42,148 nucleotides of DNA from Octopus bimaculoides (GCF_001194135.2 NC_069000.1:16057716-16099863); one strand, 5' to 3'; positions 6,763-30,538 are shown, counted from the first letter of the stretch. Notes: generated from the sequence alone by a model not told the origin. Numbers and translations are program-made.

Positions 6763-6834
6763 GTACTGGAAAATGCGTTTTAATGTCAACGATGTTGTCA
6801 GCTTTAATTTCACTGTTAATGGATAACAGGGAGT
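6763..6834 (+). CDS. Candidate 72-nt leader exon of Ig gene 1 (ATG 6783; MSTMLSALISLLMDNRE)
   Basis: Acceptor TTTCAG| and consensus donor |GTAAGT. Its phase-1 end joins the V exon in frame. Same length and open frame at 25231-25302. Only a mediocre signal peptide. Confidence 0.4.
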
Positions 6835-9800
6835 GTAAGTTACGATTAAAGAAAATATTTTCTTTTCGGCTACAACACCAAATCTTCCTCTCTTCATTAT
6901 TTGCTATGGTTTTTGTATTTTTGTACCACCCAAATAAACGTTTAGACACAGACACGCACGCTCGCGCGCGCAAAATTCTTTATGGTTGCCTACACATGCA
7001 TACATATAGAGGTACAACATTGACTTTCTTGACATTAATGGTCCGCAAACGTCTCATAAAGATACTCTCAAGGAAAAATAACCAAATGAAGTTTATTTCT
7101 CAACGTATTCCCTCTTGCAGTCCATACACTTCTTCCATCGGTGTTGCAGTGCTTGGATTGTATTCGTGAAGAAGCTTTCATACAACAGGAGATATGAGGT
7201 CGTCCAAACTGCGATGCTCGTACCTAGCCTAGTCATTGTGAAAAATATTCTCAACGCTCCCATGGAATATTCTGTTAGCATTGCCTATTTGATTTATAGT
7301 CAATCGCCTGTCATCCATCATCATGTGGTGAATACTATCAACGTTTTCTTTGGTTGAGGCGGTTGCAGAACGTTCAGGTATTGGTTCATCTTCAAAAAAC
7401 TCCCTTCCCTTTCTAAATTCAGTTGCCCACTTTTGTATTGTTGATAAACCTGGAGCGTCATCCAATAATTTGGTAACCATGTCAGCAGAAATGTCCTTGG
7501 GGTTTGAACCCCATTTCTGCAAGTACTTAATAAAGAGGGGATGTTAAAGTTTGTCCATCTTCAAGAGAAATCGCTACCAGTTAGTTCTGAAATATTCTAT
7601 GAACAATCAGACGTCAGTTTACCTGGAACGTGACAATTCAGCTATTAAAAAAGATAGCTGAAATTAATGAAAAGATTTCAGAGATTTGAGAATTAATGTA
7701 AAGATTTGACAGTCGGCCTATGAACTTTCCAGCCGACTTTCGTATCTCATTTAATCATTTAAATAAATTTAATATTTTCTTTACTAAATGTATGTTGTCA
7801 GAACTGACAATCTCTGATTTGGAAAAACAATGAGTAATCGAGAATGGTTTTGGAACTGAAAAATCTCGGTCAGGTCGTCGTGTGGATAAGGCCGTATGTT
7901 GTAAAGTACGTAACATTCAGTCAGTCTATTACACAACCTTGATGCATGCCGTCTTATGAAATCGGCTTCAGATCCCGCATTCATCTAACCGAAAAAGTGT
8001 GGCAAGCTGAAGCAAATGTCGGCTGCTTTCAGATAGGAAAACGTTTAGCCCTATCTCAAGTTTTAGGGTTTAGGGTTAGAGTTTGGATTTTAGTTTTAGT
8101 GTTAGGGTTAGTATTTAAGATTATGATTTGGATTTAAGGCTTAGGGTTCGGGCTAGGTTTAGGGATAAGTTTTAGGATTAGGTTTTAGAGTTAAGTTTAG
8201 TGTTTATAGAGTTTTTCAAAATACCATTGTAAATGTTAATTAGTTGTTTCCTTTCCTTTCTATATTCTTTCTTTTTGCCTTAATTGTTTTGTAAACTTTT
8301 CATTATTAATTTATTTAAAAATGTCTATTTGTAATTTTCCTTGCGTCACGTGTCGAAAACAAAATAACAAAATACAAGATACTTTTCATATCACTGTTAC
8401 GACGTTGTTTAGAATTTCGGTCATTGAACGTCCTCCAAAAGTTGCTTCTATTTTCTCGTAACTGCCATAGAAAATACATCTGTGTAGAAATTCTGAATGA
8501 AATTGTGTATTTCTTACAGAAACGACTGTAGATAGGTTTCTTTTAAAAACAGCCGGAACACTGTCTCTGCCTCTCCATTCACATCCATCCTGAAAGTGAT
8601 TGTAATAGTGATTGCCATTCTTGGAAATGCGTGCCTCAAGGAGATATACTTTCGGTGTAACTTGCCCGCTATTTTTAAAGTAATGCATTAGTCACTTTGT
8701 CCGTTTGGAATACGGACGTTTGCAAAACTGTCTAAAATAATCTAAACCGAAGCTATTAAAACTGTGGAAGAAAGCGAGGGGTTGGGAAAAGTGGTAATGA
8801 GAAATCAAAGAGGCAAAGAGAAAGAGAATGAATTGTCCAGAAAATGCTGGAATGAAAGAAAAAGTGACTAAGAACTAAAAGATTATTGACGGTGAGACCA
8901 AGGGCGTGAATACAATACAAGAAAAAGAAGAGGTAGAGGTCAGAGAATGGAAATTGTATATATGTACGAATATCACACTATCGACCAGGTATCAGATATT
9001 GTTATACACCACTGGACGGAATCCGCTTCCAATTCTGTCTTAATTGTGTCATTTTTTTCCAACTTCAACCCGTATTTTCCATTTTTAATGGAATATTTAA
9101 AGTATAGTAATTTACAGCGACAGAAAGTCTTTCTTTTCAAATTTGAATGAATTTTAAAATGGTTTTTTCGAATTACGTCGCTTTTCTTGTAAAGTTGCAT
9201 GTCTTGGCACCAATTACCGACGTAAGCTGAGGTGTGAGTTTACTTATGTCACACCTCCAGCACGTCGCAAATGGCCAAGTTGGTAATATTTTAACGGAAT
9301 ATCCTATACTTCATTTTCCCTCACAGAATCTTCACTAATTGCTGATGTATCTAAAACTAACTTCTTATAGTTGGCTTGATATTTTATTTTCACTGCAATT
9401 CATTCCTCTTTTCTCTTTCATTAATTTATTCTTCCTTTCTCCTTCCTCAGTTTTAATATATTAATTTATTCATTTATTTTCCCTTATTTTTTATTTTACT
9501 TTCGACCACTAAGTTTTCCTTTTTCTTAGTCTGCACTCTTGTATTTTTCTCATTTAGCTCCAGTTTCATACTATTTTCTCGATGCTATAAGGGATCGCTA
9601 TCGTTTGTTTTATTTTCGTGTATATATGCTGATTTCGGTTTTGTTCATATTTGTTCTCCTTTTCATTTATCTTTTGTTGAATGCTTTCTTCTTGTTCGTT
9701 TTCTACTGTTCTCCTCAATCTCATTGGCTTTGTGCCAACCCCTTCATTTCATCTGTCTTGTATTTGATGTTCCTCAGACCTTATACTTGAATGTCTTCCG

Positions 9801-12800
9801 CTATGTTGTGTGTTGCTTGCACATAGTTTTTTTTTCTTACTTCATTACTGTTTTCTATCACCTCATTTGGCTTGGGCTGTCGTTCACGCTTTGATTGTTA
9901 TTTTCAATATAAGAGCGCATGGCCTAGTTGTCAAGGTATCGTAGTCACGATCGTGAGATCATGATATCCATTTCTCGACTGTGTGGTGCATTGTTTTCTT
10001 GGGCAAATCATATCTTCTCACGTTGCTCTTCCATCACTTCGATACCCGACGTGTGGTACACCTATTCAGACACCATCGATTTGATGAATGGAGTTTGTTA
10101 ATGTACAACATATACTTCTGATCACTTTAACAAATTATTTTGCAGGGTGTTCAGCAATAAATTGCTGAACCTTCTTTCTCGGCCTACGAGAGCCTACCAC
10201 CATTCATTCATTCATTCATTCATTCATTCATTCATTCATTCATTCATTCATTTTCATTTTATTCAATGCCATGACTCTCCATATTATTATCTTCTACGCT
10301 ATTGTTCTATAGCTGCAATTATATATTTCTCTGATTTACATGTCGCCCGTATTTTTTATTTATTTATAGCTATTTATGTTGTAGAAATGACACCAGCCGA
10401 GGGTATTGAAGTTGGAAAGACAATTAATATATCAATAACATGCTTGCTTGTGTTAAAGAATCTTCTTGACTTCAAACTTCAACAAAACGGAAATACAGTC
10501 GTACATATACAATATTCCCGTATCATCCACGGATACAGAAAATTAAATACTAGCAACGGTTTCGACTGTGATTTACCTGTTGCTAATATAGATTATATTA
10601 CCTGTTGGAAACATAAACCCACTTGCAATGATGTAGCAGCTTACTCATGTAAAACATTCAACGCAGTTTCAAAAAAGAAGGTTTTTAAAGGTTGGTGTTA
10701 CCCGGCTTTTGCACTTATTCAGCCCCAGAAATATTCATTTTCAGTAGCTGTATTTATTTTGTGAATTTCTAATGCACTGCTGAGCGCAGATCTGCAGATT
10801 TTGACACGTGCAATATTTTGCACATTCCAAAATCCTTTGGTTTTCTGTTCTATATTGAATAAAAATACTCTGTCCATGGTGTACAATACCTAGTTGTTCT
10901 ATTCTCTGTAGAATGAAGTAGCAGTTAGGATAATTGATGTAGAAGGACAAATATTTTAAATTAATGTTAAACAACTTAATGTTAAAAACAATTCATTATG
11001 TGAATGACTAAATTAAGTTAACTTTTTTATAATTTTCCAGTCACGGTTAGATTATGTTTTAAGATTTAGGAATAAGATTAAAGCATATCCTCGGTAGTCT
11101 CCATATAGCTGCTAAATATAAGATTCTCTCCCTGTTACTTTTCATTTTTGATGAATTATAATTAACTAAATTTCTGAGATCCACCCACCTGTTTCTGACC
11201 AAAGTCAGTAATTTACAAAAAGATTGTTGTAATCAATAAAGGTACAACTTTAAAAATAATATTTCTTGGGTTATAGCAAGCAGTTGACTATTAACTTTTC
11301 ATCCAGCTATATATCTGATCATCATTTCCATGACTATCAGATTTAGCCTAAGATTCACAAATCAAGTCTAATAAAACCGAAACAGTTTTGGCGATTTTCC
11401 AGTAAAACTAAAGACTATATTCTGGCTTTACTACAGTCCCTATTTAATATTGGGTTGTCTCTCTTTTTTGTTTTATGTAGCAGTGACTGAAATTAATAAT
11501 TTATCCTGACAAGAAAGTGTTTTATTTTTAATTATGATTTATTGTGTCTTGAATTTCCATAAGAAGTTTGCTATCACCCATTACTACTAAGTTTTCTTAA
11601 GCGTCCCTGGGTATTTTCTGTACGGCGTGTAAATTGGAATTTGGCTTATATTTTGATGTTTCTTTTAAAATCATTCCCAAGAGATCTATTATTATAGGGA
11701 TCATTTCTGTTTTCCTTTCCGTCATTCTAGGTATCTTTTTGTTTCCCAATTTTTTGATATTTGGATAATTTTTACATTTCGTTTAGAAATAAATCAGCAC
11801 TTGTTAGGACTAGTATTTTGGTAAAAAAAAAGTAATTCATTTCCTACTAGCCTTGGAAAATTTATGGTCGATGACATTGATTTCCACGAGTCAGTGGACT
11901 GACAAATCCCAGTCTGTTGTTACTTGCAGAGGTTTTTATTCAGATGTAAGTCTAAATTACCGCCATTTATGTTTGTATTATATAAAGCCAATTTAATTTC
12001 CAAGCAATTTGAAACAACCAACTTTGTCACGTCTATTGTATCCATTCTTTGTTAAATATGGTTAACCAGTGACCATATGTAATGTTTCTCTTACCAATAT
12101 GCATATATTCCGCAGATATTTAATGCATTCTGTTTCATTACATGAGTTTAGTGGTTTCGAGTTAGGAAATCTTTGATTCTGTGCCGCACACAAAAGTCCA
12201 ATAGTGCTAGTTTTCGATTATATTTTTCAACCATTCAGCAGATTTTTAAAAATCTATTTTCACGTCCTACAGTACTGTCATGCATTCACCATAATTTTAA
12301 CTGTCTAGTAGCATGATCTTTGTTTTTTACACAATCACCGTTGTTTATGCCCCTTTGTATTCACATTTTATCAAACAAATCAGCCGCTGTGACGTATTTT
12401 CTAACTATTTGCTACTTTGAAGACAGAGAACGGTGTTTTCTTTCTGATCATGTCTTTAAGCTATATATATTTGCTTTATATTCTTCCTTATTAGTTATAT
12501 TTCTAATTCCATTGTGCATATTTTATAAGAGTTTTATAGTTTCATAATGACCATATATCTCTGTGTTAGAGGGAGAGATAATCTTTCTTGTCAGATTTCA
12601 AATTTGGGGTGGTGTATTTTTAATGCAGTATAGATTTCATTTTTCTTATTTCCTCTCTCAAGTCTTGATATTTCATCTTGCGTCCAGTGGAGAATATTAT
12701 AACTAAAGCTAATTGCCTGATACTTTTTAAAAATATTTAGCTCGTCTGTTAAATTATTATACTTGTATTGCTAAGATTAGGTTGAAATTTTATTTGACGA

Positions 12801-15800
12801 TAGCATAGAATTAGACCTCAGAAAGCGAAAACAAAAATGAACGTCACACATGGATGCTACAATGACAAACACAGCAGTAATAACAATGAAGAACAATACC
12901 CGCTGCAAAATCACTACAAAATAGTGAAGTTGCTTGCTACCGTCGTTGTCAAAATTCTGAGAACTCAAAGAGGTGCCAACCTACCAAAACTAACATCAAC
13001 ACAGCATGAACACAATTGCACACATAAGCCAAATTACATCATTTCCTTTTGTTTTGCATTAAAAGATGACGAGAAGTAGGAGTACATCGAAGTATGGCAA
13101 ACAATCATCAAAGTAATTACCATAGCATCACTGAGAAAAAAGAAAAGGAAAGTAGACCAAATGCCAAAAGAAAATAACTCAAAATTCTCTGTGACTTAAT
13201 CAACCAACACAACTATCATAAAAAAATACCAACTATAAAACATACAGCATATCCTAAAACCATAAGTACGTTGATCTCAACCCTGATTATATCACCCTCA
13301 AAGCATCCAGGAAATCATCTGTTATGAGTGATTAATAGAATATCAGATATGTTTTATTGCATAATATTTTGCTGCTGCAAAAGCTGACACAAAGCTAACT
13401 TGAAGTGCTGAATCTCTGAGAATACATCAATGACGTATATTTCTCATTTGGAGATTCTACAGGATTCACTATACAATGTTAGTAGGCAAGCAGTTGATAA
13501 TAGTGTTAAACTTGGCTATTGATGAATTTGACATTTTCAACGTTACATAGCGATTTACATTGTTTTGATTGTCATGGCTTTGAAAAGTGTTGATGATTAA
13601 AGAGTTTTCCACAATAATTTTGTTTGTTAACAAACAGAACGAATGTGTAAATCAATACGGATCGTCAACAGCTTGTATGTATCTGTAACCATGAAACATT
13701 ACTTACAAATAATTCAATGAAAGTTGCTGAAATGATTAACGTGGATGAGAAACAATTACACATTGTAAACAATACTAGGTTTATAAAACAGACAAGTAAT
13801 TATTGCTGAAGAGAACTTTACTTATATATATATTCTTACTTATCTGTTCCCACTCTTCTACTTATGCTTGTTTATTCTCTCTCCTACTTATTTTCCTCCC
13901 CTTTCTATCAGCCACCTCTTCTATATATATATATATACATATATANNNNNNNNNNNNNNNNNNNNNNNNNNNNNNNNNNNNNNNNNNNNNNNNNNNNNNN
14001 NNNNNNNNNNNNNNNNNNNNNNNNNNNNNNNNNNNNNNNNNNNNNNNNNNNTATATATATATATATATGTATGTATTTATGTATGTATGTATATATATAT
14101 CTTTCTATTAGTCTTTTGTCTTCTGTCTCTCTCTGTCTTTCCCTCTGTCTCTTCTGTTTACTTTTCTTTCTCCCACTCTTCCTCTTGCTACGTTTTTTAC
14201 TCTCTTTTCAACTTATTCTTCTTCCCTTCCTGTCAATTCTGTATCAACCCTCCTCTCTATCTATGAGTCTCGGTTTTTCTCTTTTTTTTTGTCTTTTCGC
14301 TTGCGTTTCCCTCTTACACTCTCTCCTCTTACTGCTGTAATTTCTTCACTTTCTCTCTTACATTTCCTCCTGTATCTCCTTAACATGCATTACCACCCTT
14401 TCTCTCCTATCTTTTCTGCCTATTCTTCTGTACCTCACAACACTAGAGAAGTTAAAGCACCCACCAGCTAATGTCTTCTCTCTGGTTATGTCTTTTCTCT
14501 TGTTTTCGTTGATTATCGCCAAATTTAATTAATACCTTGTCCGAATTATGATTATTTCATTAAACTAGTACTTTTCCTCATTTTCACTGAGCTCTGTAGT
14601 AACCTGAATAGCGTGAACAGAGGTAGGTATAGATGTCATTTTGTGAGGTAACGTGGTTGCTTGATCTGTTAGAAATACCAGTCAGATTGCCCTCAAATCA
14701 CTCCCTACAGTCTTTCAGAAAAAAGGCATTTGGTGATATATTTCTAGACGTACTGTATCAAAAATACAAAGAGGTTGACCAAGCTGAAACATCTTTGATC
14801 GTAGGTCTGCTACTTCAGGACTGGTCTAGGGTTAAATAATCAGATAGTTTTATGTAACGTATACATTTATGTAAAGGGTGTATATTATACTCTAGTTAAA
14901 CGAATGTATTGGTCAAGTTTTATAGTATTATAATTAATTATTATAATAATTAATAGTTTTTTAACATTATTCACTTTAGAACCTCTTCATATTCACATTT
15001 CACTTGGTTTCCTTCTCTATTATTATTATTATTATACAATGTGGCTCTGTTGTATCTATTTGCTTCTCTGGCAGCGTTCCATCTGTTGCCTCAATTTTTG
15101 TCCATTTCCGTTTTCTTCACTAGTTCTTTGTGTTTACCTGGGCACTTCCCTTGCCTAACTATTATGTAAGAGATTTGAAAAAAATGCTTTATTATTATCT
15201 CTCATTTATTTCAAATGCAAAAATATTAATGTGTTTATATTGTTTAAAAAATTTGTACAATATGTAATATTGTTTGCATTGCTTTTTGCCACATTGGCCC
15301 AAGTCAAATAAAGTGAAAAGCCTCCGATACAAAATAAAATAATTTCTGAAATTACATATTGCTTGAAAAATTTGTACAATATGTAATATTGTTTGCATTG
15401 CTTTTTGCCACATTGACCCAAGTCAAATAAAGTGAAAAGCCTCCGATACAAAATAAAATAATTTCTGAAATTACATATTACTTGATTAATACAAAATATA
15501 TCCAGCATGAAGAACAATTCGAGTGGTGTTAACCATTTTAGTTTAGTATGAAGATTGTAGTTTATATTAGTGAAACCACCCAATAGTCTTAGTAATATGT
15601 AAAGCATATTGTTCTAACATTTTGCTATATTAGATCGTTTTCTTTTCAGCAAAATCTACTTTAGAGAGTCTGCAAATTGTCAAGGGAGTTAAGGTGAAAG
15701 GCAGACAAGTAAGAACATTTAGATGTGTAGCAAATGTTGGAGCACCATTTAAATCGCATGTATCCTTTGTGTGGATTGTAACAAAACATGGTAAAACATA

Positions 15801-15966
15801 TAATGTCACCAAAAACGAGACCATGCCAAATACTTCGAGCTGTTATTCTCGGGTGTCATCCGATTATACTTTCACTCCACAAGCCAAAGACGTATCTGGC
15901 ACAAGTATCACATGTAAAACAAATTTTGGCTTACTTACCAGACGAATCTCCGCTAAGAGAAGGTAA
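6783..15966 (+). CDS. Ig gene 1 model: join(6783-6834?,10370-10690,15650-15966); ~229 aa V-like + C2-like Ig protein, probably secreted
   Basis: Phase-1 GT-AG junctions keep one open frame through two Ig folds to TAA. The first exon is tentative. Confidence 0.65.
7055..7745 (-). mobile_element. Internally deleted mariner element
   Basis: ORF 7229-7522 is a mariner N-terminal HTH (STIQKWATEFRKGREFFEDEP...DRRLTI). C-terminal HRWKKCMDCKREYVEK. TIR-like GTCGGCCTATGAACTTTTCCAGCCGACTTTCGTA at ~7712-7744. Confidence 0.85.
8058..8210 (+). repeat. Degenerate (TTAGGG)n-like tract
   Basis: TTTAGGGTTTAGGGTTAGAG...GTTAGGGTTAG...CTTAGGGTTCGGG...TTTAGGG. Confidence 0.7.
9915..10035 (+). mobile_element. 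Degenerate tRNA-derived SINE
   Basis: GCGCATGGCCTAGTTG...GATCGTGAGATC...GTGCATTGTTTTCTTGGGCAAA...CACGTTGCTC; absent from the unit-2 paralogous flank. Confidence 0.55.
10201..10252 (+). repeat. (ATTC)n microsatellite upstream of V exon 1; paralog at 26235-26270
   Basis: Perfect CATT repeats, about 13 and 9 units. Confidence 0.95.
10370..10690 (+). CDS. Intact V-like Ig domain exon, gene 1
   Basis: TTTATAG| acceptor and AAAG|GTTGGT donor; 321 nt, phase 1-1. GKTINISITC (B strand) and PTCNDVAAYSC (D-x-A-x-Y-x-C, F strand); sequons NIS and NTS; no stops. Confidence 0.85.
11990..12730 (-). mobile_element. Dong/R4-like LINE fragment in the V-C2 intron
   Basis: Minus-strand remnants such as IIHWTQDEISRLER and a C-terminal Cys region; homologous to 4990-5480. 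Confidence 0.55.
13270..13810 (+). repeat. Paralogous intronic segment, second copy at ~23835-24410
   Basis: Shared CCTGATTAT.TCACCCTC, GCTGCAA.AGCTGAC, TCAACAGCTT.TAT.TATCTGTAAC, TGATTAACGTGGATGAGAAACAATTA. Confidence 0.85.
15247..15479 (+). repeat. Near-perfect 119-bp tandem duplication
   Basis: AAAAATTTGTACAATATG...CTGAAATTACATATT occurs twice (TTTGTAC at 15252 and 15371), with about one internal mismatch. Confidence 0.95.
15650..15966 (+). CDS. Intact C2-like Ig domain exon, gene 1 (terminal if TAA 15964-15966 is used)
   Basis: TCTTTTCAG| acceptor in phase with the V donor. TFRCVANVGAP...FVW...SSCYSRVSSDYTF...GTSITC; sequons NVT, NET, NTS; ends ISAKRR*. Confidence 0.85.
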
Positions 15967-17060: not shown

Positions 17061-17377
17061 TATGTATGTATATCTATGTATCTATCCATCTATTTATCTA
17101 TTTATATTCATAAACACACACATACAAACGCGTGCACACACACGTGCGCACATGTAAATATGTATACATGTAATTTTCTCCATAACCTAACTATTGTTTC
17201 TCTATATGATGGCAATCCTTCCCTTTTACAGAGTGCTGTTTGCTTAACATCTCTTCCAAAATTTCGAAGTCAACTTCACAGTCAACTTTATTGGTAATAA
17301 ATATATATATTTCCTCTATATAATGTACTGAGATCTTTGTTCAGTAGTTACTGTTTGTTGTTTTTCATTATTAAGTA

Positions 17378-17491: not shown

Positions 17492-18868
17492 CGGAAACAA
17501 TTATTCGAAAAACACTTATTCGAATTGACAATTTATTGAAAGAAAATTATTCGAATTGACGAGAGTTTGAATTGTTTGCTATTTTGAACATGCCCCATTG
17601 ACAGATACAATACTGGAAGGTGAAAGACAGAAAATACTTTGCTTGTGCTGATTAACATGGAATGTATATACCTTTTAAAGCTGGCTGGATGTATTGATAG
17701 GGAAAATGGTAAGCCCATAGTCAAAATTGATGGTTTCGTATTTGTGAAAATAAGCAAATTAGAACCAAACTCTATTGGAAGTGCAATAAGTTTGCATCGT
17801 ATTGTAAATTCTGTGCAATAACTAATGACAGTGAAGTGGTTAATGTTTCACGTGCGCATAATCATTCTGGTGATTCCATAATCATAGAAGTGCGTACTTA
17901 TATGAATGGAGTAAAACAAGAGGCTAAAGAAACCCGTTGTTCCCCGCATTATATGATTTGTACTGTTGCTTCGTAATTAAGTGAAAACGTAGCGCAAGCT
18001 TTACAAGCAATAAGATCTATAAGAAGGTCTGTACACAATGTAAAACATTACATGCTGTTAAGAATAACCTTACCATTTTAATAGTTTATGCTTTACTTCT
18101 TGATTAGAAAGCCGACACAAACAGAAAATTGGTTTCAAAAACTCAGTCAAGCGTTCTTAATTTACAAGTTACGATATTAACGTCAGATTTTGAGACTTTA
18201 TTAGATTCCAATATATATATATTTCAATAGTGAATACTATTCTGGATTATTTTAAAGATGTGTGGGTTGGTCATCCTGCAAGATATCATAGCCGAAGCCC
18301 TACGTTCGAGATATTTATGTGGTCTTGCTTTGAAAAGTCAATCTTGGTTTACCGAAAACTAACAACGCCCTTGAAGGATGGCATAGAGCTTTTTTACAGC
18401 AAGTGTCATCCCATCATCCCTCAATATGGATATTCGTACACGCACTTAAAAGAACAGGACTTGCAAGAAATTAATATTGCAAAAATATGAGCAGGTTTCA
18501 AAATATTAAGAGAGCCAAAAAGATACCGAGACGCAAATGAAAGACTCAAGAAATTTATGGAATCCTTTAACGAGTACTCTTCAGCAGTTGAATATTTATG
18601 TAGGGTAGCAGATAAATTAGCTTAAATTTTTTTTAATCATTGCAAATAAAGAGATATGCTTATTAAATAAAAATCATTTGTGTACTGATTTTTAATTTCA
18701 TCATTTTTGTTTAAATAAAATAAAAAAAATTACAATAATTAACATTTCGTATAATTGTCCTTTTGAATAATTTTCATTCATACAATTTTCCATTCGAATA
18801 AATGTTTTTCGAATAATTGTTTTCGAATAATTGTTTTCGAACAATTATTTTCGAACAATGTTCACACA
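17492..18868 (+). mobile_element. MULE/Mutator-like DNA transposon, deleted
   Basis: Inverted ends made of repeated AACAATTATTCGAAAA / TTTTCGAATAATTG. FLYWCH-like GKPIVKIDGFVF near 17710. C-terminal LDYFKDVWVG...MWSCFE...RTNNALEGWHR motif. Confidence 0.75.
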
Positions 18869-18869
18869 A

Positions 18870-19590
18870 ACCTTCAATTATAGGCCACAGTGGGAGTTCG
18901 TTGATTACTTCAGTATCGGTAGTAGATTTTTGATTTAGAACAAATTTAGTGTTCAACCCATCTTTCTCAGAATTTCAACTTTTCTACTTGAGAGTTTTAT
19001 TTTGTCGCTAGAGAGAAAAGTTTGTGTGGCTCCCTTTTGATTGTCATACAGTGCTCTAAGTTTGTGAGAGTTATCATCCAGTTCCAGTTCTTGGGCTTTT
19101 TTACCCTCCAAGAAATTTTCATCTCATACAATTTTTTCTGTGTAGTTTTCTTAGAGGAAATGTATAGGGATCTGAGGGTTGGTGAGTTTTTGTCCGAGAT
19201 CCGTATCTTGTGTCTCTTGTGCAAAGTTTGTAGGAGAAGTTTAATTTGAGAATCGTTTTCGTCGAACCAAACTTGGTGCTTGCGTTTCACGAATCCTAGA
19301 ATTATTCACTAGATGATTTGAGTCTGTCACGAATATTGTGCCACAGCACTTCATGGTTGTTACACTCCTCTATTTCTGCAAGCTTTGAGTTTAAATGCAT
19401 TTCAAAATGTCGTGTCGTTTCTGGATTTTTTAAAGAAGGGTCATTTATTCTCGGATGTATACTACGTCTCAGTATCCTCTTTGTATATGCTTGCTGCGAA
19501 CTATTTCGTGATCCGTTTCAGCAGGCAGACAAATACGAAAACATTTGGAAGTATTCCTGATCTAGTCACTGGCTCATGGTAGAATATGTT
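18870..19590 (-). mobile_element. RTE/BovB-like LINE fragment (endonuclease-RT linker)
   Basis: LNVASLKNPETT...KRKHQVWFDENDSQIKLLL, typical of RTE linkers. Confidence 0.8.
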
Positions 19591-20219
19591 ATNNNNNNNN
19601 NNATAACCCGAGAGAGTTAGGGGTTGAGGATCCAACCCACTAAGGGATAATATCTATCCAATATACTGCTGAGAGGGTACCCAATTATTCTTACACTAGT
19701 GTTATACCAGATGCAATAAGTGAGTGCGGGTAAAAGGGGGTTACTTTACCCTAAATTTCTATAGCAATATGAAAATGGAGGAGAATATGAGGTACTCATC
19801 AACTTGCAGACACTGTATTCCGTTGATTAATCTGTTTATTTTATAAATAAATTGACAAAAAACACAATATACAGACACTTATGACATACCATGTCATATC
19901 AACAATTAAGATTTCAAATTTAAAGGACATTTAGTAATTGGAGAGGGACAAGTTCTTACAGCTGTTTCGGCTTAGCATTGGCATGCCCCATTCTATCATT
20001 ATAGCTCCCGTACGCTGGAGTAAGTAGTAGATAAAAATGATGTAATGGTGGTACATGCATGATTCGCTAGGCCTCTTCAGATATTTACAAAATTCAATAT
20101 GAATTTTGCCAAATTTTAATACAAATATATAATAAGAATAAAAATAAAAAATAAAAATATTAAAATTAAAGGCACATAAAAAGTAAATTTCTATACAAAA
20201 TGGCCAGAAATATGTAAAA

Positions 20220-20829: not shown

Positions 20830-22440
20830 AATCCCTTGATAATTCTTTTCTTAAGATGAGAAGTGCTTTGACGATCGAGATTTTCTGGAGTGTATACCTT
20901 CATCTCTTCTGACTAGAAGCAATATATAATCTCCCATTATAGCAGTATCCCATCGTCCTTGGTATTTTCCTTCCATAGTTGCGATGTCCTGATGAAATCT
21001 CTCACCATGCTCCTCACTGACATCACCTAAGTTTTCGGTGGAAAAATCTAGGTGAGAGTGCAAAAAATGAACCTTTAAGGACATACAACCCATTTTCTTG
21101 ACGTTTTTAATAAGCTTTGCTACCAGCTGTTTGTAATTAGGAGCCTTGTGATTTCCTAGGAATCCACGAACTACATCACGAAATGCACACCAAGCTTCTT
21201 TTTCAACTTTTGTCATCGCTCTTTCCGGTTTTTTCGACTTTAACATTGCATTTACTTGGGGCCCAACAGATATGCCACTCTTGATCTTAGCCTCAGATAG
21301 CTTTGGAGACATAAGACAAATTTCTTGAAAAGCTTCTCCTCTAAAATTTAAGGCCTTCACAAACTGTTTTACCAATCCGAATTTGTTTTGAAGTAGAGGT
21401 AATAAGATTTTTTTGGAATCTACTAGAGGCTGTTTGAGAACGTTTAACATTCCTGGCTGCAGTTCCACTCATGGGGGCCAACGTACTCTCTTGTAATAAT
21501 TATCATCAGCTCTGCTGTCCCATAAGCAAAGGAAACATGAATATTTTGTGTATCCCCCTTGCAAGCTAAGCAAGAAGGCAAGCATCTTGAAATCAGCACA
21601 AACATCCCACTTGAACTCAGCGTAATTTATTTTGTCGAAAAGTTCTTTGACATTATCGTAATTTTCTTTCTTCTGTATGGAGCGTGCAAGAAACAAAGAA
21701 GGGTATTTATTTCCATTGTGGAGCAACACTGCTTTGAGACTTCGTGTTGAGTTTCCTGCATTTCTTGGCTGCTGCTACTGGTTGACTCTTCAGATGAAAT
21801 ATTTTCTGGTGGTAGTGGTACTCGTAAACTGTCATCATGTGGGACAGGGGCTCTAGATGATGGTATGTCTGGATACTGAAGAGCTTGTCTTCCTTTCACT
21901 TTTCTGTACTTTGTCACATCCATCATACAAAAGTAACAGTCATCGTGATGGTTCTTTGGCTCTCTCCATATCCTTGGAATGGAAGAAGGCATTGACCTTC
22001 CTGTACCTCTTAACCACCCTTCTAGAGTAGATCGACAGCTTCCACATATCACATGTGGGGCCCATGGTTTGTCCTGGTCACCCATGGGCATTCCGAAATA
22101 GAGTCTGTACGTTATCCACAATTTGGTACCGTACACGATCTTATATAATACCTGTTTTTTTTTTTTAGTATAATAACGACACACATAGCAAAATGTATCT
22201 GGAGAATTTTTACATACTCTTAGTAGCCATCCTGAAAGTAGCAGAACTTAGACATACATTTAGTAGCGGAACATTATAACAATACCGAATATACAATAAC
22301 ATTGAAAGTCGACATATTTTTTTAACTGTTGATGATACAAAAAAAATAATTTCATTTTTGGAATCAGCAGAAAAAATGGATTGATAAACAATTAAAAAAA
22401 TACAAGAAACAAATTTTTTTTTTGATAATTGTTACGTTAT
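20830..22440 (-). mobile_element. Chapaev3-like (CMC) DNA transposon, internally deleted with stops
   Basis: CKNSPDTFCYVC; YFGMPMGDQDKPWAPHVICGSC...WREPKNHHDDCYFC; SLKAVLLHNGNKY; GGYTKYSCFLCLWDSR; KVHFLHSHLDF...SEEHGERFHQDI. Family assigned from memory of these motifs. Confidence 0.65.
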
Positions 22441-22525: not shown

Positions 22526-22823
22526 ATTCTATTAATGGCACCAGCTGACGGTATTGAAGTTTGGGTGACTTTGTAACATGATGGTATGTGGTATTTAATA
22601 TTTTGACTTCATGCTGCAACAAACCGACGCTGTGCATATACAGTACGTCATAAAGGACAGCATGCGTGAAAACCATTAATAATTATCCAAGGTATCGAGA
22701 ATGATTTACCTTCTGGTGATGTAAGTTATATTATGTGTTGGAAAGCAAACCCCACATACGAAGCTGTAGCAGCCTGCTCATGTAAAGCTTATAAACGAAC
22801 TTCAAAAAGGAAGATGCATAAAG
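22526..22823 (+). pseudogene. Pseudo V-like Ig exon psiV-2
   Basis: MAPADGIEV...ENDLPSGDVSYIMCWKANPTYEAVAACSCKAYKRTSKRKMHK|GTTAGT with stops and frameshifts. 5' flank cut by the transposon; a ~590-nt downstream deletion relative to psiV-1. Confidence 0.85.
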
Positions 22824-23304: not shown

Positions 23305-23630
23305 ATAAGGCGGTGAGCTAAGAAAATTGTTAGCACGCTGGGCGAAATTGCTTTGCGGTATTTCGCACGTCGCTACATTCTGAGTTCAAATTCCACTGTC
23401 CCCTCCCTCCCACCTTTAGTAGTAAAGATCATATAAAATCAATAAGACAGCGAGCTGGCACAATCGTTAGCACGCCGGTCAAGAAGCGCTTTGCAGTGTT
23501 TTGTCCTTTTACGTTCTGAGTTAAAATTCCACCTAGGTCGACTTTACCTACTATCCTTTCGGGGTCGATGAAATAAGTACCATTTAAGATGTAATCGACT
23601 AGCCACTCCCACACCAAAATTTCAGGCCTC
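23305..23630 (+). mobile_element. SINE pair orthologous to 5510-5925, opposite orientation
   Basis: Reverse-complement match that includes the non-SINE flanks. Confidence 0.9.
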
Positions 23631-24459
23631 GTGCCTAATATAGAAAGGATTATATAAAGTTAATATAATTTATTAGTTTCTTTTGCATATTCTTAGTTTA
23701 TGTATGTGTATGCAAATATAGTATTGATATATCCCATTTATGTTCATTAGAAATTAAATAAATAAAGAATTTTGACATGTACGAATATTCATTTGCCCCA
23801 CTGTATTTACTATATATATTGCAGTTCCAGTGTTGGGTCTCAAATCCTGATTATCTCACCCTCCACACTTCAAAGGAACTCTCAGTTAAAAGAGATTAAT
23901 AAAATATCAGGCATTTTTATTGAATATTTTTTTGCTTGCTGCAACAGCTGACTCGTTGTTAACTATATGATGTGTCTGTGTGATAACATTAATTACATAT
24001 ACGTATTAATCATTTGAAAACACTACAGGGATCACTAATAAATGTCAATTGAGAAACGGTTGTTATTATTATTAAATTTGCTTATTGATTACTTTGTAGC
24101 GATCTCTCTTTGTTACGTAGTGATCTCTCTTTGTTACGTAGCGATCTCTCTTTGTTTCGACTTTCATGAATTTGACAAGTGTGAGTGATTGAAGAGTCTT
24201 CCCTGCATCATTTTATGTATGGTGCATACCAAAACGAAAGACTAAATCAACATGGATCATCAACAGCTTATATCTATCTGTAACGAAGAAACATTACTCA
24301 TAAATGATTCATTCTTAATTGTTGAAAGTGATTAACGTGGATGAGAAACAATTAATCACTATTAACTATAATAGTATTGTAAAACTGACAGGTGATTATT
24401 GTCTTTATTATAGTTTTATGTGCATATTATACACACATAAATACATAAATACATACATA

Positions 24460-24749: not shown

Positions 24750-24810
<61 letters not shown>

Positions 24811-24820
24811 CACACACACA
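24750..24820 (+). repeat. (CA)n microsatellite
   Basis: Direct sequence. Confidence 0.98.
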
Positions 24821-25230: not shown

Positions 25231-25302
25231 TTACAAGAAGCCGCATTTTTATGTCAACGATGTTGTCAGCTATAATTTCACTGTTAATGGATCACAGGGA
25301 GT
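25231..25302 (+). CDS. Candidate 72-nt leader exon of Ig gene 2 (ATG 25251; MSTMLSAIISLLMDHRE)
   Basis: TTTCAG| ... GAGT|GTAAGT; paralog of 6763-6834; phase-compatible with the V exon at 26390. Confidence 0.4.
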
Positions 25303-28300
25303 GTAAGTTAAGATTAAAGAAAATATTTTCTTTTCGGCTCAAACACACAATCTTCCTCACTTCGTTATTTGCCATGCTTTCCGTATTTCTATGCCACCCA
25401 GACAAGTGCTTAGACACGCGCGCGCGCAAACACACACAGAGGCACCTATACATGCATGCATATAGATGTACAACACTGACTTTCCTGACATTAATGGTCT
25501 GCAAACGTCTCATAACATGCACTTATTTACCCTAAACTAGAGGTACCTGTAAGAGGGTCGGCTGAAAATTTATAGGCTGATAAAGATACTCTGACGGAAA
25601 ATAACCAAATGAAGTTCGTTTTTCAACGTATTCCTCCTTGCAGTCCACACTGTTTCATTTGGTGTTGCAGTGTTTGGATTCCATTCGTGAAGAAGCTTTC
25701 ATCCAACAGCAGATATGACGTCGTCCAGACTGCGATACTGGTACCCAGCCTAGTCATTCTTCATGGTGTGGAACCAATGGCTATTCTGCTGGGGTCAAAC
25801 TAGGAGAATCGTGAGGGAGATCAACCAGTTCAAAGCCACAGTCACTCAAAATCGCCATTAAAAGCAAGGATTTGAGAACTGTTCATGGGATTTTGGTCTT
25901 GTTAACCTTTCTTAACTACATCAGCATTTTGAAATAAAACTCTCCATTTCTGATGTGGCCATTTTGAAGATAGGTCAAGAAACGCAATGTAATTTCTATC
26001 TCGAAAATCTGAGGCTGTCACCTTCCCTGCAGATTAAAAGACTTTGGTCTTCCTTGCTGCAGGTGTGGAGACCCGATGTGTGGTATACTGTATTCCTATT
26101 CAGAGAACGTTGATTTGATGAATGGAGTTAGCTAATGTACAACACATACTTCTGATCACTTTAAAAAATTATTTTGCAGGGTGTTCAGCAAAAAATTGCA
26201 GAACCTTCTTTTTCGTCCTACGAGAGCCTACCACCATTCATTCATTCATTCATTCATTCATTCATTCATTTTCTTCAATGCCATGACTCTCCATATTGTT
26301 ATCTCCTTCTGCGCTATTGTTTTATAACTGCTATTCTATAATTCTCTCATTTACTCTCATTTACTTGTTACCCTTGTTTTTACTTATAGCTATTGATATT
26401 ATAGAAATAACACCAGCTGAGGGTATTGAACCTGAAAAGACAATTAATATATCAATAACATGCTTGCTTGTATTAAAGAATCTTATTGACTTCAAGCTCC
26501 AACGAAACGGAACTACAGTCGTACATATACAATATTCCCTTGACCATGCGAAATACAGAAAATTAAATACTAGCAAAGGTTTCGACTGTGATTTACCTGT
26601 TGCTAATATAGGTTATATTACCTGTTGGAAACAAAAACCCACTTGCAATGATGTAGCAGCTTACTCATGTGAAACATTAAGCGCAGTTTCAGAAACGAAG
26701 TTCATTAAAGGTTGGTGTTACACGGCTTTTGCACTTATTCAGTCCCAGAAATATTCATTTTCAGTAGCTGTATTTATTTTGTGAATTTCTGCAGATTTTG
26801 ACACGTGCAATCTTTTGCACATTCCAAAGTCCTATGGTTTTCTATTTTATATTGCAATGAAAATACACTGAGTACAATATCTAGTTGTTCTATTCTCTGT
26901 AGAATAAAATAGAAGTTAGGATTATTGATGTAGAAAGACAAAAAAAATTTCAATTATTCACTATTAAACAACTGTATGTTAAAAACAATTCATTATGTGA
27001 ATGACTAAATTAGGTTAATTTTTTATAATTTTCCAGTCACGGTTAGATTATGTTTTGAGGATAAGATTTAGGGATAATATTAAAGCATATATTCGGTAGT
27101 CTCCATATAGCTGCTAAATATAAGATTCTCTCCCTGTTACTTTTCATTTTTGATGAATTAAAATTAACTAAATTTCTGAGATCTACCCACCTGTTTCTGA
27201 CCAGAGTCAATAATTTACAAAAAGATTGTAGTAATCAATAAAGGTATAACTTTAAAAATAATATTTCTTGGGTTATAGCAAGCAGTTGACTATTAACTTT
27301 TCATCCAGCTATATATCTGCTCATCATTCCATGATTATCAGATTTAGCCTAAGATTCACAAATCAAGTCTAATAAAACCGAAACAGTGTTGGCGATTTTC
27401 CAGTAAAACTAAAGACCATACTCATGCTTTACTACAGTCTCTATTTAATATTGGGTTGTCTTTCTTTTTTTGTTTTATGTAGCAATGACTGAAATTAATC
27501 ATTAATCCTAACAAGAAAGTGTATTATCTTTAATTATGATTAATTGTCTTGAATTTCCATAAGAAGTTTGCTATCACCCATTACTACTAAGTTTTCTTAA
27601 GCGTCCCTGTGTCTTTTCTGTACGGTGTGTAAATTGGAATTTGGCTTATGTTTTTGAAGTATCTTTTAAAATCATTCCCAAGAGATCTATTATTATAGGG
27701 ATCATTTACCTTGAGTGAAGAAAAGTGTGAATTTTTCTTACCGGAAATGAGATATTTAGGACAAGTCATTGACAGAAACAACTTGACCTTTCGAGGGCAA
27801 TAAAAAATATGCCTCCTCCTACTAATATAGCGATCTTACAGGCATTTTCACGACATGCAAATTACCAAATTATATCCCAAATATGCATAAGATTAGGGCT
27901 CCACTGAATAATTTGCTGAAAAAAGATATGAAATGGAATTGGTCAGAAAATTGTCAAAAGGCATTTGGGAAAATTTTTTAAAATATTAATATTTGATTTG
28001 TCTCTAGCTCACTTCGATCCTGCAGCGGAGATTGCTGTATAGAGAAGTAATGTTACATAAATATATCGAATGTAACATGAAGGCGGTGGTCCATGCTCAC
28101 GTTCCCTCATATCAGTAGAGTAAAATTAGAGTCAAATCGAAGAAAAAGCTCTACTGATCATTTTTACTGTGAAAAGATTTCAAAGATTTTTGCACGGTAG
28201 AAGTTTTCGGCTACAGACTGATCACCGATTGTTATTATCGATATTTGGGTCGAAAAAAGGAATTTGTACCTATACTGCTAATAGATTCCAACGCTAGACT

Positions 28301-30538
28301 ACGATACTGTTAAACTATGATTTCAAGATGTAGTGCATACCATCCAAGAAATTAGGCCATGCAAATTGTCTATGAAGTCTGATTTTAAAAAGCGTGGAAC
28401 CATTGGAAGAAACTGTGATCGGCGCTTTGCGAGAGGAAAATGAAATTAAAAATGTTTTTGGTGACGGTATTTGTGAATCGCCAGTTATATTACCAGACAT
28501 AAATTCAAAATCGGAGAATGCTAAATTCATTATAAAAATGGAAGAAACAGTAAAGGCTAAAAACAAAATAGAAATATGCGCAACACAATGAACCATTTCT
28601 CACTGTGTGACAAAAGGTTGATGCATGCGCAAAAAGTCGTAGTGCCATCTGCACTACAAAAGCTTTCAGTAAAGCAAATTCATATTGGGCACCCAAGGGT
28701 TTCGAGAATGAAACCGCTAATGAGAAATTACGTTTCTAACAAAGGCGGCGAGCTGGTAGAAACGTTAGCACGCCGGGCGAAATGCCTAGCGGTATTTCGT
28801 CTGCCTTTACGTTCTGAGTTCAAATTCCACCGAGGTCGACTTTGCCTTTCATCCTTTCGGGGGCGATAAATTAAGTACCAGTTACGCACTGGGGTCGATG
28901 TAATCGACTTAATCTCTTTGTATGTCCTTGTTTGTCACCTCTATGTTTAGCCCCTTATGAGTAATAAAAAGAGTGAGAAATTACATATATTGGCCTCGAA
29001 TGGACCGTGATATTGAAGATTCGGTGAAATCCTGCAATCCTGCAGAAGTTTTACCCTTGCAGCCAAGTCACCACCGGTAAAATTCCAACCTTGGTCTAAA
29101 ACCGACAGTCTATAGACCAGGCTTTGTGTAGATTTTGCTGGATCAATAAATGGCGCATATTCCCTGATTCTTGTAGATAGTTATTCTAAGTGGATGGAAA
29201 TATGTAGATGAAGGAAACCAACCTCTACAGTAACACCAGAATTTATTCATGAACTCTTTGCAAGATATGGTGTCCTGGACACCATAGAATTCAAAACAGT
29301 ACGCAGTTTACGGCGAATGAGATTTTTGCAAAGAAAAAAAAGATGCAACTGTTCACATCTGTACTCCGCCATATCACCCAAGATCAAACGAGCAAGTAGA
29401 ACGGTTCGTGGATGCATTTAAAAGAGCATTAAAGAAAGCAAGAAACGTGCTAGTCGATAAAGCAGCAACGGCAGAACTCTTCAGTGTTTAGAGGATAACA
29501 CCGAACCCAAACACTTGTTCAGGTAAGTCGCTTGCGGAACTAATGTTTGCTCGAAAAATAAAAACCAATTTTTCACTAGATGTTACCAGTAAGAAAAACA
29601 AATAGAGAAAACACCAAAAATACGAGAAAGTATTTTAATATCGGTGACAAGGTGTTTTTCAAAATATATTAAAATGCAGAGACGTTTGGGAAGACGGAGT
29701 AGCAACAAAACGAGTAGGTAAGATGATATATTTGACAAGAGGCGAAAAATGAGAACACAAAAGACATTTAAACCAGACAGATATGCGAGAAAGCAGAGAC
29801 GCCCATCAATGTGCTCTACGACAAACACTTGATGTCCCACAAGAATTCCAATTTAAGAGGAGCAGCACAAGAAAGAGGAAATAAGCAGAACTTTTGGAAG
29901 TGTTTGTGTGTCCGGGTGTGTGTATGTGTGTGTATGTACTTGTGTGTGTGTGTATCTCTCTGAGTTTGTGTGTATGTCTGTAAGTGTGTGCGCATGAGAT
30001 GTGTGTTTGTCCAAGCGCGTGTGTGTATGTATATGCAAGAAACAGTTGTTTACAGGGTCCAGCATGAAGAACAATTCGTATGGTGTTAACCATTTTAGTT
30101 TAGTATGAAGATTGTAGTTTATATAAGTGAAACCACCCAATAGTCTTAGTAATATACAAAACTTATTGTTCTAACATTTTGCTATATTAGATTGTTTTCT
30201 TTGCAGCAAAATCTAACTTAGAGAGTCTGAAATTCGTCAAGGGAGTTAAGGTGGAAGGCAGACTAGTAAGAACATTTAGATGTAAGGCAAATATTGGAGC
30301 ACCTTTTAAATCGCATGTATCCTTTGTGTGGATTGTAACAAAACATGGTAAAACATATAATGTCACAAAAAACGAGACAATACCACTTGCTTCGAGCTGT
30401 TATTCTCGGGTGTCATCCGATTATACTTTCACTCCACTAACCAAAGACGTATCTGACACAAGTATCACATGTAAAACAAATTTTGGTTCACTTACCAAAC
30501 GAATCTCCGCTAAGAAAGCAGTTCGTAAGAAAAGGTAA
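25251..30538 (+). CDS. Ig gene 2 model: join(25251-25302?,26390-26710,30207-30538); ~234 aa V-like + C2-like Ig protein
   Basis: Same exon phases and splice sites as gene 1, and an open frame throughout. Confidence 0.65.
25553..25760 (-). mobile_element. Truncated copy of the mariner at 7055-7745, retaining the other TIR
   Basis: TAAGAGGGTCGGCTGAAAATTTATAGGCTGA, then sequence colinear with 7056-7240. Confidence 0.75.
26390..26710 (+). CDS. Intact V-like Ig domain exon, gene 2
   Basis: TTACTTATAG| acceptor and AAAG|GTTGGT donor; 321 nt; all five Cys and the PTCNDVAAYSC motif conserved. Confidence 0.85.
27710..29890 (+). mobile_element. Degraded Gypsy pol (RT C-terminus, RNase H, integrase) inside the gene 2 V-C2 intron
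   Basis: EEKCEFFLPEMRYLGQVID; FRLQTDHRLLLSIFGSKK; HIGHPRVSRMKPLMRNY; DFAGSINGAYSLILVDSYSKWMEI; PPYHPRSN.QVERFVDAFKRALKK. Confidence 0.9.
28742..28973 (+). mobile_element. Near full-length octopus-type SINE inserted in the Gypsy integrase region
   Basis: AAGGCGGCGAGCTGGTAGAAACGTTAGCACGCCGGGCGAAATG...GGGGTCGATGTAATCGACTTAATC; TGAGAAATTAC duplicated at 28721-28731 and 28974-28984. Confidence 0.9.
30207..30538 (+). CDS. Intact C2-like Ig domain exon, gene 2
   Basis: TTTGCAG| acceptor, phase 1; TFRCKANIGAP...FVW...SSCYSRVSSDYTF...DTSITC; ends ISAKKAVRKKR*. Confidence 0.85.

What the first reader, a model, noticed from the sequence alone, without database searches (positions are those of the whole stretch)
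6763..30538. Hidden tandem family of two-Ig (V-like + C2-like) protein genes in a probable octopus genome
Seen: two 321-nt phase-1 exons with V-type Ig signatures (G.T..ISITC, D-x-A-x-Y-x-C). Each splices in frame (AAAG|GTTGGT ... CAG|CA) to a downstream C2-type exon (FRC.AN.GAP...FVW...ITC) that ends in a stop. N-glycosylation sequons are present; no transmembrane exon was found. Known: tandem, fast-evolving V-domain IgSF families act in invertebrate immunity and allorecognition (amphioxus VCBP, Biomphalaria FREP/VIgL, Hydractinia Alr). Inference: this may be a lineage-specific secreted Ig recognition family lacking the lectin, chitin-binding or TM modules of those families. I do not know whether it has been described.
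Basis: partly seen in the sequence, partly recalled or inferred. Interest (0 to 1): 0.85.

Follow-up and report, generated by a model that had tools for sequence, protein, structure and literature searches.

The report
Octopus-only tandem two-Ig-domain gene family
The window holds two neighbouring copies of a small octopus gene for a probably secreted protein of two antibody-like (Ig) domains; the family is found only in octopods, is already predicted in databases but never studied, and evolves unusually fast, as binding or recognition proteins often do.

Summary
The window is Octopus bimaculoides chromosome CM046620.1. It holds two tandem paralogues, each with a leader exon, a 321-nt phase-1/1 V-like exon and a C-like exon. 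My five-exon splice of gene 1 translates exactly to RefSeq LOC128250269 isoform X1. Gene 2 contains UniProt A0A0L8FP14. With a 35-sequence family alignment, AlphaFold2 gives two beta-sandwiches (pLDDT 94), and Foldseek matches V+C pairs (antibody light chains, TCR, VCAM-1, butyrophilin, CD4).

Corrections:
- The genes are not hidden. They are annotated as uncharacterised.
- Gene 1's "stop" overlaps a donor that the annotated mRNA uses, which adds RVLFA.
- Each gene starts in a decayed V pseudo-exon that supplies the ATG.
- Relatives carry GPI-like tails, TM segments or mucin stalks.

A profile search of 1.84 billion proteins found 40 representatives. All 30 whose source names I looked up are Octopus or Argonauta, and those with a chromosome on record are almost all clustered on one chromosome per species. 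Cluster paralogues show dN/dS of about 1 to 3.6, and their exons are often more diverged than the flanking introns, while framework residues and reading frames stay intact. This fits diversifying selection on a recognition or binding family. An immune role is untested. No paper mentions these loci.

The parts
3453..3723 (+). Degenerate V pseudo-exon 1. Its last 10 nt (3714-3723, ATGCTTAAAA|gtaagt) are the first coding exon of gene 1 (MLK plus the first base of the next codon).
   Evidence: tblastn 37% identity to the V exon, with frameshifts and stops. Shares the +2 insertion and the B-strand deletion with the other two pseudo-exons. The splice model equals P0001.
6763..6834 (+). Leader (signal-peptide-like) exon of gene 1. 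72 nt, phase 1/1, encodes TGKCVLMSTMLSALISLLMDNRE.
   Evidence: AG/GT sites, and part of the exact P0001 model. Homologous to the canonical signal peptides of paralogues. Kyte-Doolittle hydrophobic core about 2.2-2.4.
10370..10690 (+). V-like Ig exon of gene 1 (321 nt, phase 1/1).
   Evidence: AF2 strands A-G with C' and C''.
13946..14051 (.). Assembly gap (106 N) inside the V-C intron of gene 1.
   Evidence: It interrupts no exon. The junction is corroborated by gene 2 and by O. sinensis L008.
15650..15966 (+). C-like Ig exon of gene 1. The annotated mRNA ends it at 15962 (donor AG|GTAAAT). Read through, it stops at TAA 15964-15966.
17232..17247 (+). Coding start of the terminal exon of gene 1 (completes R, then VLFA and the stop).
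   Evidence: Pattern search. The exact P0001 model.
19593..19602 (.). 10-N gap of unknown size between gene 1 and unit 2.
   Evidence: A matching 10-N gap sits at the equivalent place of unit 2 (37655-37664).
22526..22823 (+). Degenerate V pseudo-exon 2. It keeps ATGCATAAAG|gttagt (22814-22823), the candidate start of gene 2.
25231..25302 (+). Leader exon of gene 2 (TRSRIFMSTMLSAIISLLMDHRE).
26390..26710 (+). V-like Ig exon of gene 2.
   Evidence: Part of UniProt A0A0L8FP14 (P0002).
30207..30538 (+). C-like Ig exon of gene 2 through its TAA. The same AG|GTAAAT donor motif overlaps the stop.
31343..31501 (+). Tail-like ORF (52 aa plus stop) 0.8 kb after the C exon of gene 2. Its use in O. bimaculoides is not established.
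   Evidence: 77-79% identical to the C-terminal exon of the O. sinensis orthologue, and repeated 0.8 kb after another C exon in L001. No convincing donor in gene 2.
40643..40946 (+). Degenerate V pseudo-exon 3, the start of a third repeat unit that runs into the gap at the window's end.

Best explanation
The window holds two complete tandem paralogues, and the 5' end of a third unit, of an IgSF gene family detected only in octopods.

Shown. Each gene is built as follows: a decayed V pseudo-exon that now supplies the 5' end and the ATG, then a 72-nt leader exon, then a V-like Ig exon, then a C-like Ig exon, then a short terminal exon. The product is about 240 aa long. It consists of a hydrophobic leader followed by two Ig sandwiches with 8 conserved cysteines: the canonical B-F pair in each domain (C25-C94 and C133-C196) plus C67, C79, C86 and C172.

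Inferred. The window proteins are secreted, N-glycosylated and strongly cationic soluble proteins, because they lack the GPI-like, TM or mucin tails that paralogues carry. C67-C79 probably bridges strands D and E, and C86-C172 probably links the two domains. The family behaves like a germline-diversified binding module: the framework and the reading frames are conserved while surface positions change at or above the neutral rate. The changing positions are the N-terminus and the BC, C'C'' and FG regions of the V domain, plus much of the C domain. The most likely role is extracellular recognition or binding. The soluble window genes would act as free binders or ligands alongside membrane-tethered paralogues. 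The target (microbe, self tissue, gamete or prey) is unknown.
For: - Identity and gene model: 100% match to LOC128250269 X1; the exact 243-aa splice; gene 2 contains A0A0L8FP14.
- Conserved architecture in O. sinensis, gap-free, with no ATG in its leader exon, so the start must come from the pseudo-exon.
- Fold: pLDDT 94.3, pTM 0.84; Fab light chains, TCR, VCAM-1 D1D2 TMq 0.50, BTN TMq 0.58, CD4; profile against PDB, E = 7e-5 to Fab light chains, running from the V F-strand through the C domain.
- Family range.
- C-terminal variety and leader hydrophobicity.
- Selection: (dN/dS 1.2-2.4 among V exons and up to 3.6 among C exons); with (exons more diverged than flanking introns, Fisher p = 3e-9, 4e-10 and 5e-4; O. 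sinensis versus window genes, dN/dS 0.83-1.04).
- Internal control: the pseudo-exons of the same units carry indels and stops, while the 11 intact V and C exons translated from the cluster (6 V, 5 C) carry none.
- Invariant framework residues.
- Position of the variable sites.
- Charge.
Against: - I could examine no expression data, so transcription, tissue and the exact 5' end rest on RefSeq models.
- The leader has an atypical charged c-region (DNRES or KKRES) with no clear -3/-1 cleavage site, and SignalP was not available.
- For the two window genes compared with each other, dN/dS is about 1 (1.23 for V, 0.75 for C). Their exon divergence equals their intron divergence (p = 0.2). That is also what relaxed constraint would give.
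- Pfam hardly recognises either domain.
- The disulfide assignments are deduced from strand positions, not read from coordinates.
- The pooled dN > dS test on phylogenetically independent pairs is only marginal (p = 0.046).
Confidence: 0.55

Rival explanations
1. Cell-adhesion or neuronal-wiring molecules. The family would be an octopod counterpart of small V-C or two-Ig adhesion families (CD2/SLAM, nectin/JAM, Drosophila Dpr/DIP), with the soluble window genes acting as modulators.
For: Some paralogues have GPI-like or TM tails. Structural matches include VCAM-1 and CD4.
Against: dN/dS at or above 1 and exons evolving faster than introns are unusual for wiring molecules. From my own knowledge, those are normally under purifying selection. 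The window genes have no membrane anchor.
Confidence: 0.15
2. Products of a specialised secretory or reproductive tissue (saliva or venom, egg coat, seminal fluid or gamete recognition). Such tissues typically produce rapidly evolving tandem families of small, cysteine-rich, secreted proteins.
For: A small secreted architecture, strong positive charge, rapid evolution, and one family member with a weak Izumo-Ig Pfam hit (E = 0.0019).
Against: There are no tissue data. The Izumo hit is a single sub-threshold match. Membrane-anchored paralogues fit a gland-product family less well.
Confidence: 0.15
3. The two window copies are recent duplicates drifting towards pseudogenes. Their open frames would be a matter of youth, and the RefSeq models would be driven by reads from functional paralogues.
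For: Between g1 and g2, dN/dS is about 1 and exon divergence equals intron divergence. The leader c-region is degraded relative to paralogues. RefSeq models in this cluster are visibly confused, for example the 84-kb 'gene' and isoform X2.
Against: About 60 substitutions separate the two copies, with no stop or frameshift and every framework residue kept. The pseudo-exons in the same units did decay. The O. sinensis orthologue keeps the same intact architecture.
Confidence: 0.1
4. Cluster-wide combinatorial splicing. V exons would be joined to alternative C exons tens of kb away, as isoform X2 suggests, generating V-C combinations from one locus.
For: RefSeq isoform X2 (P0003) joins V 10370-10690 to a C exon 73 kb downstream.
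Against: The junction sequence (KVFK|AKSTLESLQI) is shared among paralogues, so short reads can be mis-assigned. Assembly gaps lie exactly where that C exon's own V exon should be. The path crosses an opposite-strand family gene.
Confidence: 0.05

Closest known systems
Predicted octopod paralogues and orthologues (O. bimaculoides LOC128250265/66/67, LOC106876203, LOC106878948/52, LOC106880708/13/15; O. sinensis LOC118766814-17; O. vulgaris CAI9737727-38; Argonauta hians GAB1601880)
   Same: They share detectable sequence homology (E from 1e-5 to 1e-134) and the same leader-V-C layout. They keep the same conserved residues (F65, C67, C79, K81, C86, D88, Y92). They lie in the same chromosomal cluster.
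   Different: Many carry canonical signal peptides. Many carry GPI-like tails, TM plus cytoplasmic tails, or Thr-rich mucin stalks. The window genes are tail-less, more cationic, and have an altered leader c-region.
Vertebrate V+C two-Ig ectodomains (antibody light chain and TCR chains, butyrophilin/B7, CD2/SLAM family, CD4 D1D2, VCAM-1 D1D2)
   Same: An N-terminal V-type sandwich followed by a 7-strand C-type sandwich. From my own knowledge, CD2/SLAM and butyrophilin genes are also tandem clusters, and the CD2 family has both GPI and TM forms.
   Different: Only 11-16% identity and TM-scores of 0.3-0.58, so the interdomain geometry differs. The profile search found no hit outside octopods at E <= 1e-3. 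There are three extra conserved cysteines in D1 and one in D2. There is no somatic rearrangement machinery.
Amphioxus VCBPs
   Same: Secreted, germline-diversified, V-domain-bearing multigene family of an invertebrate (my own knowledge).
   Different: VCBPs have two V domains and a C-terminal chitin-binding domain. Here there is one V plus one C domain, and no further Pfam domain.
Gastropod FREPs (Biomphalaria)
   Same: Molluscan, secreted IgSF-containing multigene family with diversification (my own knowledge).
   Different: FREPs end in a fibrinogen-related lectin domain, which is absent here. No sequence relatives were found outside Octopoda.
Germline-diversified Ig receptor clusters (teleost NITRs, KIR/LILR, Hydractinia Alr)
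   Same: Tandem clusters of fast-evolving V-type Ig genes, with pseudo-exons and both secreted and membrane forms (my own knowledge). Here, dN/dS is at or above 1 and pseudo-exons are present.
   Different: Those are TM receptors with signalling tails or motifs. The window genes have none. No canonical ITIM or ITAM was seen by eye in the one long cytoplasmic tail (P0037). Allelic polymorphism was not testable.

Membership tests
Immunoglobulin superfamily (fold level) | A beta-sandwich of about 100 aa with a B-F strand disulfide and an aromatic residue in strand C, matching solved Ig domains. | tested here: met
   AF2 pLDDT 94.3 with two all-beta domains. 516 PDB matches at E <= 1e-3, and all 50 listed are Ig-domain proteins. 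C25-C94 with F35, and C133-C196 with W149.
Pfam V-set (PF07686) for domain 1 | A score above the Pfam gathering threshold. | tested here: not met
   No V-set hit for either window protein even at E <= 10. Among the 35 family members, only 2 'ig' and 1 'Ig_3' hits at E <= 0.01. UniProt does label one relative 'V-set domain-containing'.
V-type Ig topology for domain 1 | Extra C' and C'' strands, a B-F cysteine spacing of about 65-75, and the D-x-A-x-Y-x-C motif. | tested here: inconclusive
   The DSSP string shows strands at 34-39, 42-50 and 55-61 between B and D. The Cys spacing is 69. DVAAYSC is present.
Pfam C2-set_2 (PF08205) for domain 2 | A score above the gathering threshold (21 bits). 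| tested here: not met
   17.3-17.5 bits, E about 0.005. The seven-strand C-type domain is supported structurally. C1 versus C2 is unresolved.
VCBP | Two tandem V domains plus a C-terminal chitin-binding domain. | tested here: not met
   One V plus one C domain. The protein ends 10-20 aa after domain 2. No chitin-binding hit.
FREP | A C-terminal fibrinogen-related domain. | tested here: not met
   No such domain in the window proteins or in the 35 relatives.
Alr-type or NITR-type membrane recognition receptors | A transmembrane segment plus cytoplasmic tail, and extreme allelic polymorphism. | tested here: not met
   The window gene tails are hydrophilic (KD 0.2 and -0.2 over 15 aa). TM forms exist only in distant paralogues (P0020, P0037). 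Polymorphism is not testable with one assembly.
Octopod leader-V-C family (defined here) | A leader exon, a V exon with C25/C67/C79/C86/C94 and GFDC..CWK..C.D..Y.C, and a C exon with C133/W149/C172/C196. | tested here: met
   Profile E-values from 1e-5 to 1e-134.

The most novel reading that the evidence does not exclude
This would be an octopod-specific, germline-diversified V-C recognition system. CDR-like hypervariable tips on the V domain, soluble cationic members and GPI- or TM-tethered members would together act in non-self or self recognition, for example pathogen binding or the unexplained skin self-recognition of octopus arms. Long-range V-to-C exon pairing across the cluster (isoform X2) might add combinatorial diversity.
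Probability: 0.12. Interest if true: 0.8.

Novelty: new member of a known kind. Interest (0 to 1): 0.45.

Why it matters
Cephalopods have no known diversified Ig-type recognition molecules, and how they recognise microbes or self is poorly understood. This is a chromosome-clustered, octopod-restricted V+C family. It has soluble, GPI-like and TM members and shows signs of diversifying selection. That makes it a concrete, testable candidate set for such functions. It also shows how a family that Pfam barely detects can be recognised by exon phase, cysteine pattern and structure prediction. The exaptation of a decayed V exon as the start-codon exon is a neat small case of exon recycling. If the genes turn out to be an ordinary gland product or adhesion family, the result is still a useful annotation of an uncharacterised lineage-specific cluster.

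Tried and rejected
- AF2 with only 5 close sequences left domain 1 unfolded (pLDDT < 50). This was superseded by the 35-sequence run.
- Pfam scans are almost blind to the family.
- Seven literature searches found nothing on this family: three on 16 LOC ids and one UniProt id, one on the sequencing-run ids, and three by keyword. The two papers I opened (SPLASH, and a lamprey annotation preprint) were irrelevant.
- Reading the leader exon (6763-6834) as the TM exon of the preceding gene was rejected. The phase does not fit, and it is homologous to the signal peptides of paralogues.
- I looked for a donor that would join gene 2's C exon to the tail-like ORF at 31343. Only weak or domain-truncating sites exist.
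- The three unnamed sequencing-run (Logan) relatives are unspliced genomic contigs of an unknown sample, so they give no evidence of expression.
- The TE-like ORFs at 20851-22184 have no Pfam match.


Full report
**What is there.** The window is AT-rich (35% G+C) and has six N runs. The two V-like exons are 10370-10690 and 26390-26710. The two C-like exons start at 15650 and 30207. The copies match each other at tblastn E = 3e-53 and 4e-57.

**Origin and existing annotation.** A protein search identified the source. The V+C splice of gene 1 is 100% identical to Octopus bimaculoides 'uncharacterized protein LOC128250269 isoform X1'. Gene 2 corresponds to UniProt A0A0L8FP14 'Ig-like domain-containing protein'. 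The window is CM046620.1 (GCA_001194135.2) at about 16.06 Mb. So the genes are not hidden. They are predicted but uncharacterised.

**Gene structure.**
- Gene 1: the five-exon model 3714-3723, 6763-6834, 10370-10690, 15650-15962, 17232-17247 translates to the 243-aa RefSeq protein residue for residue.
- Two points differ from the finding. First, the TAA after the C exon overlaps a donor (AG|GTAAAT). The annotated mRNA uses that donor to reach a terminal exon that adds RVLFA, so the stop is the read-through reading. Second, there are two upstream coding exons.
It is homologous to the signal peptides of paralogues (MLSALISLLM aligns with MLLAIIILTM) and has a comparable hydrophobic core.
- The first coding exon is the last 10 nt of a degenerate V exon.
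- Gene 2: 22814-22823, 25231-25302, 26390-26710, 30207-30538. This model contains P0002.

**Pseudo-exons.** tblastn found three further V-like segments at 3453-3723, 22526-22823 and 40643-40946. All three have frameshifts and stops. They share a +2 insertion and loss of the B-strand cysteine region, so they decayed before the 16-19-kb unit was duplicated. All three nevertheless keep ATG-NNT-AAA-(A/G)|GT at their 3' end.

**Cross-species check of the start codon.** The O. sinensis orthologue locus is gap-free and its gene spans 7.5 kb. It has the same order: pseudo-V, leader, V, C, tail exon. Its leader exon contains no ATG, so the start codon must come from the pseudo-exon. I infer that a dead V exon was recycled as the 5' exon.

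**Assembly gaps.** Gap 13946-14051 lies in the V-C intron of gene 1, and gap 19593-19602 lies between the genes. No exon is touched. The V|C junction is confirmed by gap-free gene 2 and by O. sinensis. However, 10-N gaps recur at the same place in successive units, next to a 96%-identical 0.9-kb segment. Copy number and order in this cluster should therefore be treated with caution.

**Fold.**
- Pfam gives only a sub-threshold C2-set_2 hit for domain 2 and nothing for domain 1.
- AF2 with five sequences folded only domain 2.
- With 35 family sequences it gave pLDDT 94.3 and pTM 0.84, with two all-beta domains.
- Foldseek against the PDB returned antibody light chains, TCR chains, VCAM-1 D1D2, BTN2A1/3A1 and CD4 D1D2 at 11-16% identity.
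- A family profile hits Fab light chains at E = 7e-5, running from the V F-strand through the constant domain. The top hits are cysteine-engineered Fabs, which inflates the score.
- The strand pattern of domain 1 (strands between B and D at 34-39, 42-50 and 55-61), the Cys spacing of 69 and the D-x-A-x-Y-x-C motif fit a V-type domain.
- Domain 2 has seven strands. Whether it is C1 or C2 type is unresolved.

**Cysteines.** Eight cysteines are conserved (C25, 67, 79, 86, 94, 133, 172, 196). From strand positions I infer a D-E bridge (C67-C79) and an interdomain bridge (C86-C172). This is not verified.

**Family.**
- An exhaustive profile search of 1.84 billion representative proteins found only 40 representatives at E <= 1e-3.
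- All 30 whose source names I looked up are O. bimaculoides, O. vulgaris, O. sinensis or Argonauta hians, and all are uncharacterised. Three are unnamed sequencing-run (Logan) contigs and seven were not looked up.
- Those with a chromosome on record are almost all on one chromosome per species.
- Members have canonical signal peptides and varied C-termini: none; a hydrophobic tail ending two residues after the segment (GPI-signal-like); Thr-rich mucin stalks; or a TM segment plus cytoplasmic tail.
- Within 104 kb around the window there are at least six intact V exons and six C exons, one of them partial, on both strands.
- RefSeq models here are tangled. LOC128250269 spans 84 kb because isoform X2 joins the window's V exon to a C exon 73 kb away. 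Gaps lie where that C exon's own V exon should be, so I regard X2 as a probable artefact.

**Evolution.**
- Between the two window genes, dN/dS is 1.23 for V and 0.75 for C, and exon divergence equals intron divergence.
- Across cluster paralogues, dN/dS is mostly 1 or above and reaches 2.3-3.6.
- In several pairs the exons are significantly more diverged than the flanking introns (Fisher p = 3e-9, 4e-10 and 5e-4).
- A pooled dN > dS test on phylogenetically independent pairs is only marginal (p = 0.046).
- Against O. sinensis, dN/dS is 0.83-1.04.
- Yet no intact V or C exon has a frameshift or stop, the framework residues are invariant, and the pseudo-exons in the same units did decay. This pattern fits diversifying selection on surface positions better than drift.
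- Variable positions concentrate at the N-terminus and at the BC, C'C'' and FG regions of the V domain. This rests on only seven sequences.
- The window subfamily is strongly cationic, with net +10 to +16 over the two domains.

**Interpretation.** The best-supported reading is a pair of probably secreted, glycosylated, cationic V+C Ig proteins. They belong to an octopod-restricted, tandemly expanding and fast-evolving binding family whose other members are membrane-tethered. The fold, the gene structure, the family range and the evolutionary pattern are shown. Secretion, the disulfide assignments and a recognition function are inferred. An immune or allorecognition role is only an analogy. Adhesion, gland or reproductive products, and early pseudogenisation of these two copies remain open. 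No paper in the held library mentions any of the 16 locus ids or the UniProt id that I searched.

**Verdict.** This is a new, undescribed family of a known kind (small V-C IgSF multigene clusters). Its interest is moderate until expression or binding data exist.

Noticed in passing
window 3453-3723, 22526-22823, 40643-40946; L008 9716-10012: Decayed V pseudo-exons with shared frameshifts sit upstream of each gene and supply the start codon (ATG-NNT-AAA|GT). The equivalent codons in functional V exons are GTT/TTC-TTT/ATT-AAA. The O. sinensis leader exon has no ATG of its own.
   Followed up: yes
window 18190-19102 vs 36631-37542; gaps 19593-19602 and 37655-37664: A 0.9-kb segment is 96% identical between units, while the rest of the unit is about 87% identical. 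In each unit a 10-N gap follows within 0.5 kb. The contig breaks recur at the same place in the repeat, so the assembly of the array may be collapsed or mis-ordered.
   Followed up: partly
window 20851-21468 and 21627-22184, minus strand: Two adjacent long ORFs (205 and 185 aa) lie in the spacer between gene 1 and unit 2 and look like a transposon remnant. They have no Pfam match and no counterpart in the other units.
   Followed up: partly
window 31343-31501; L001 91117-91272; L008 17398-17556: A 52-aa ORF ending in a stop lies 0.8 kb downstream of two different C exons. The two copies are 94% identical, although their C exons are only about 47% identical. It is 79% identical to the annotated last exon of the O. 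sinensis orthologue. No good donor links it to gene 2.
   Followed up: partly
L001 89985-90308 (73 kb downstream of window 10690): RefSeq isoform X2 of LOC128250269 joins the window's V exon to this distant C exon, across other family genes, one of them on the opposite strand. Assembly gaps lie where a local V exon would be expected.
   Followed up: partly
window gene products (10370-10690 + 15650-15962; 26390-26710 + 30207-30535): The two proteins are unusually basic: K+R 32 against D+E 12 in gene 1, and 35 against 18 in gene 2. This is more basic than most relatives.
   Followed up: partly
window 4973-5501 vs 11977-12568; 5479-5761 vs 23397-23671; 32796-33013 vs 39465-39676: Inverted duplicated segments (69-94% identical) are scattered through the introns and spacers. 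They are probably repeat elements.
   Followed up: no
window 1980-2490, 13864-14340, 33289-34647: The N gaps are flanked by TA/CA-rich microsatellite-like sequence, which shows up as artificial long 'ORFs' full of YIYI or MYVC.
   Followed up: no
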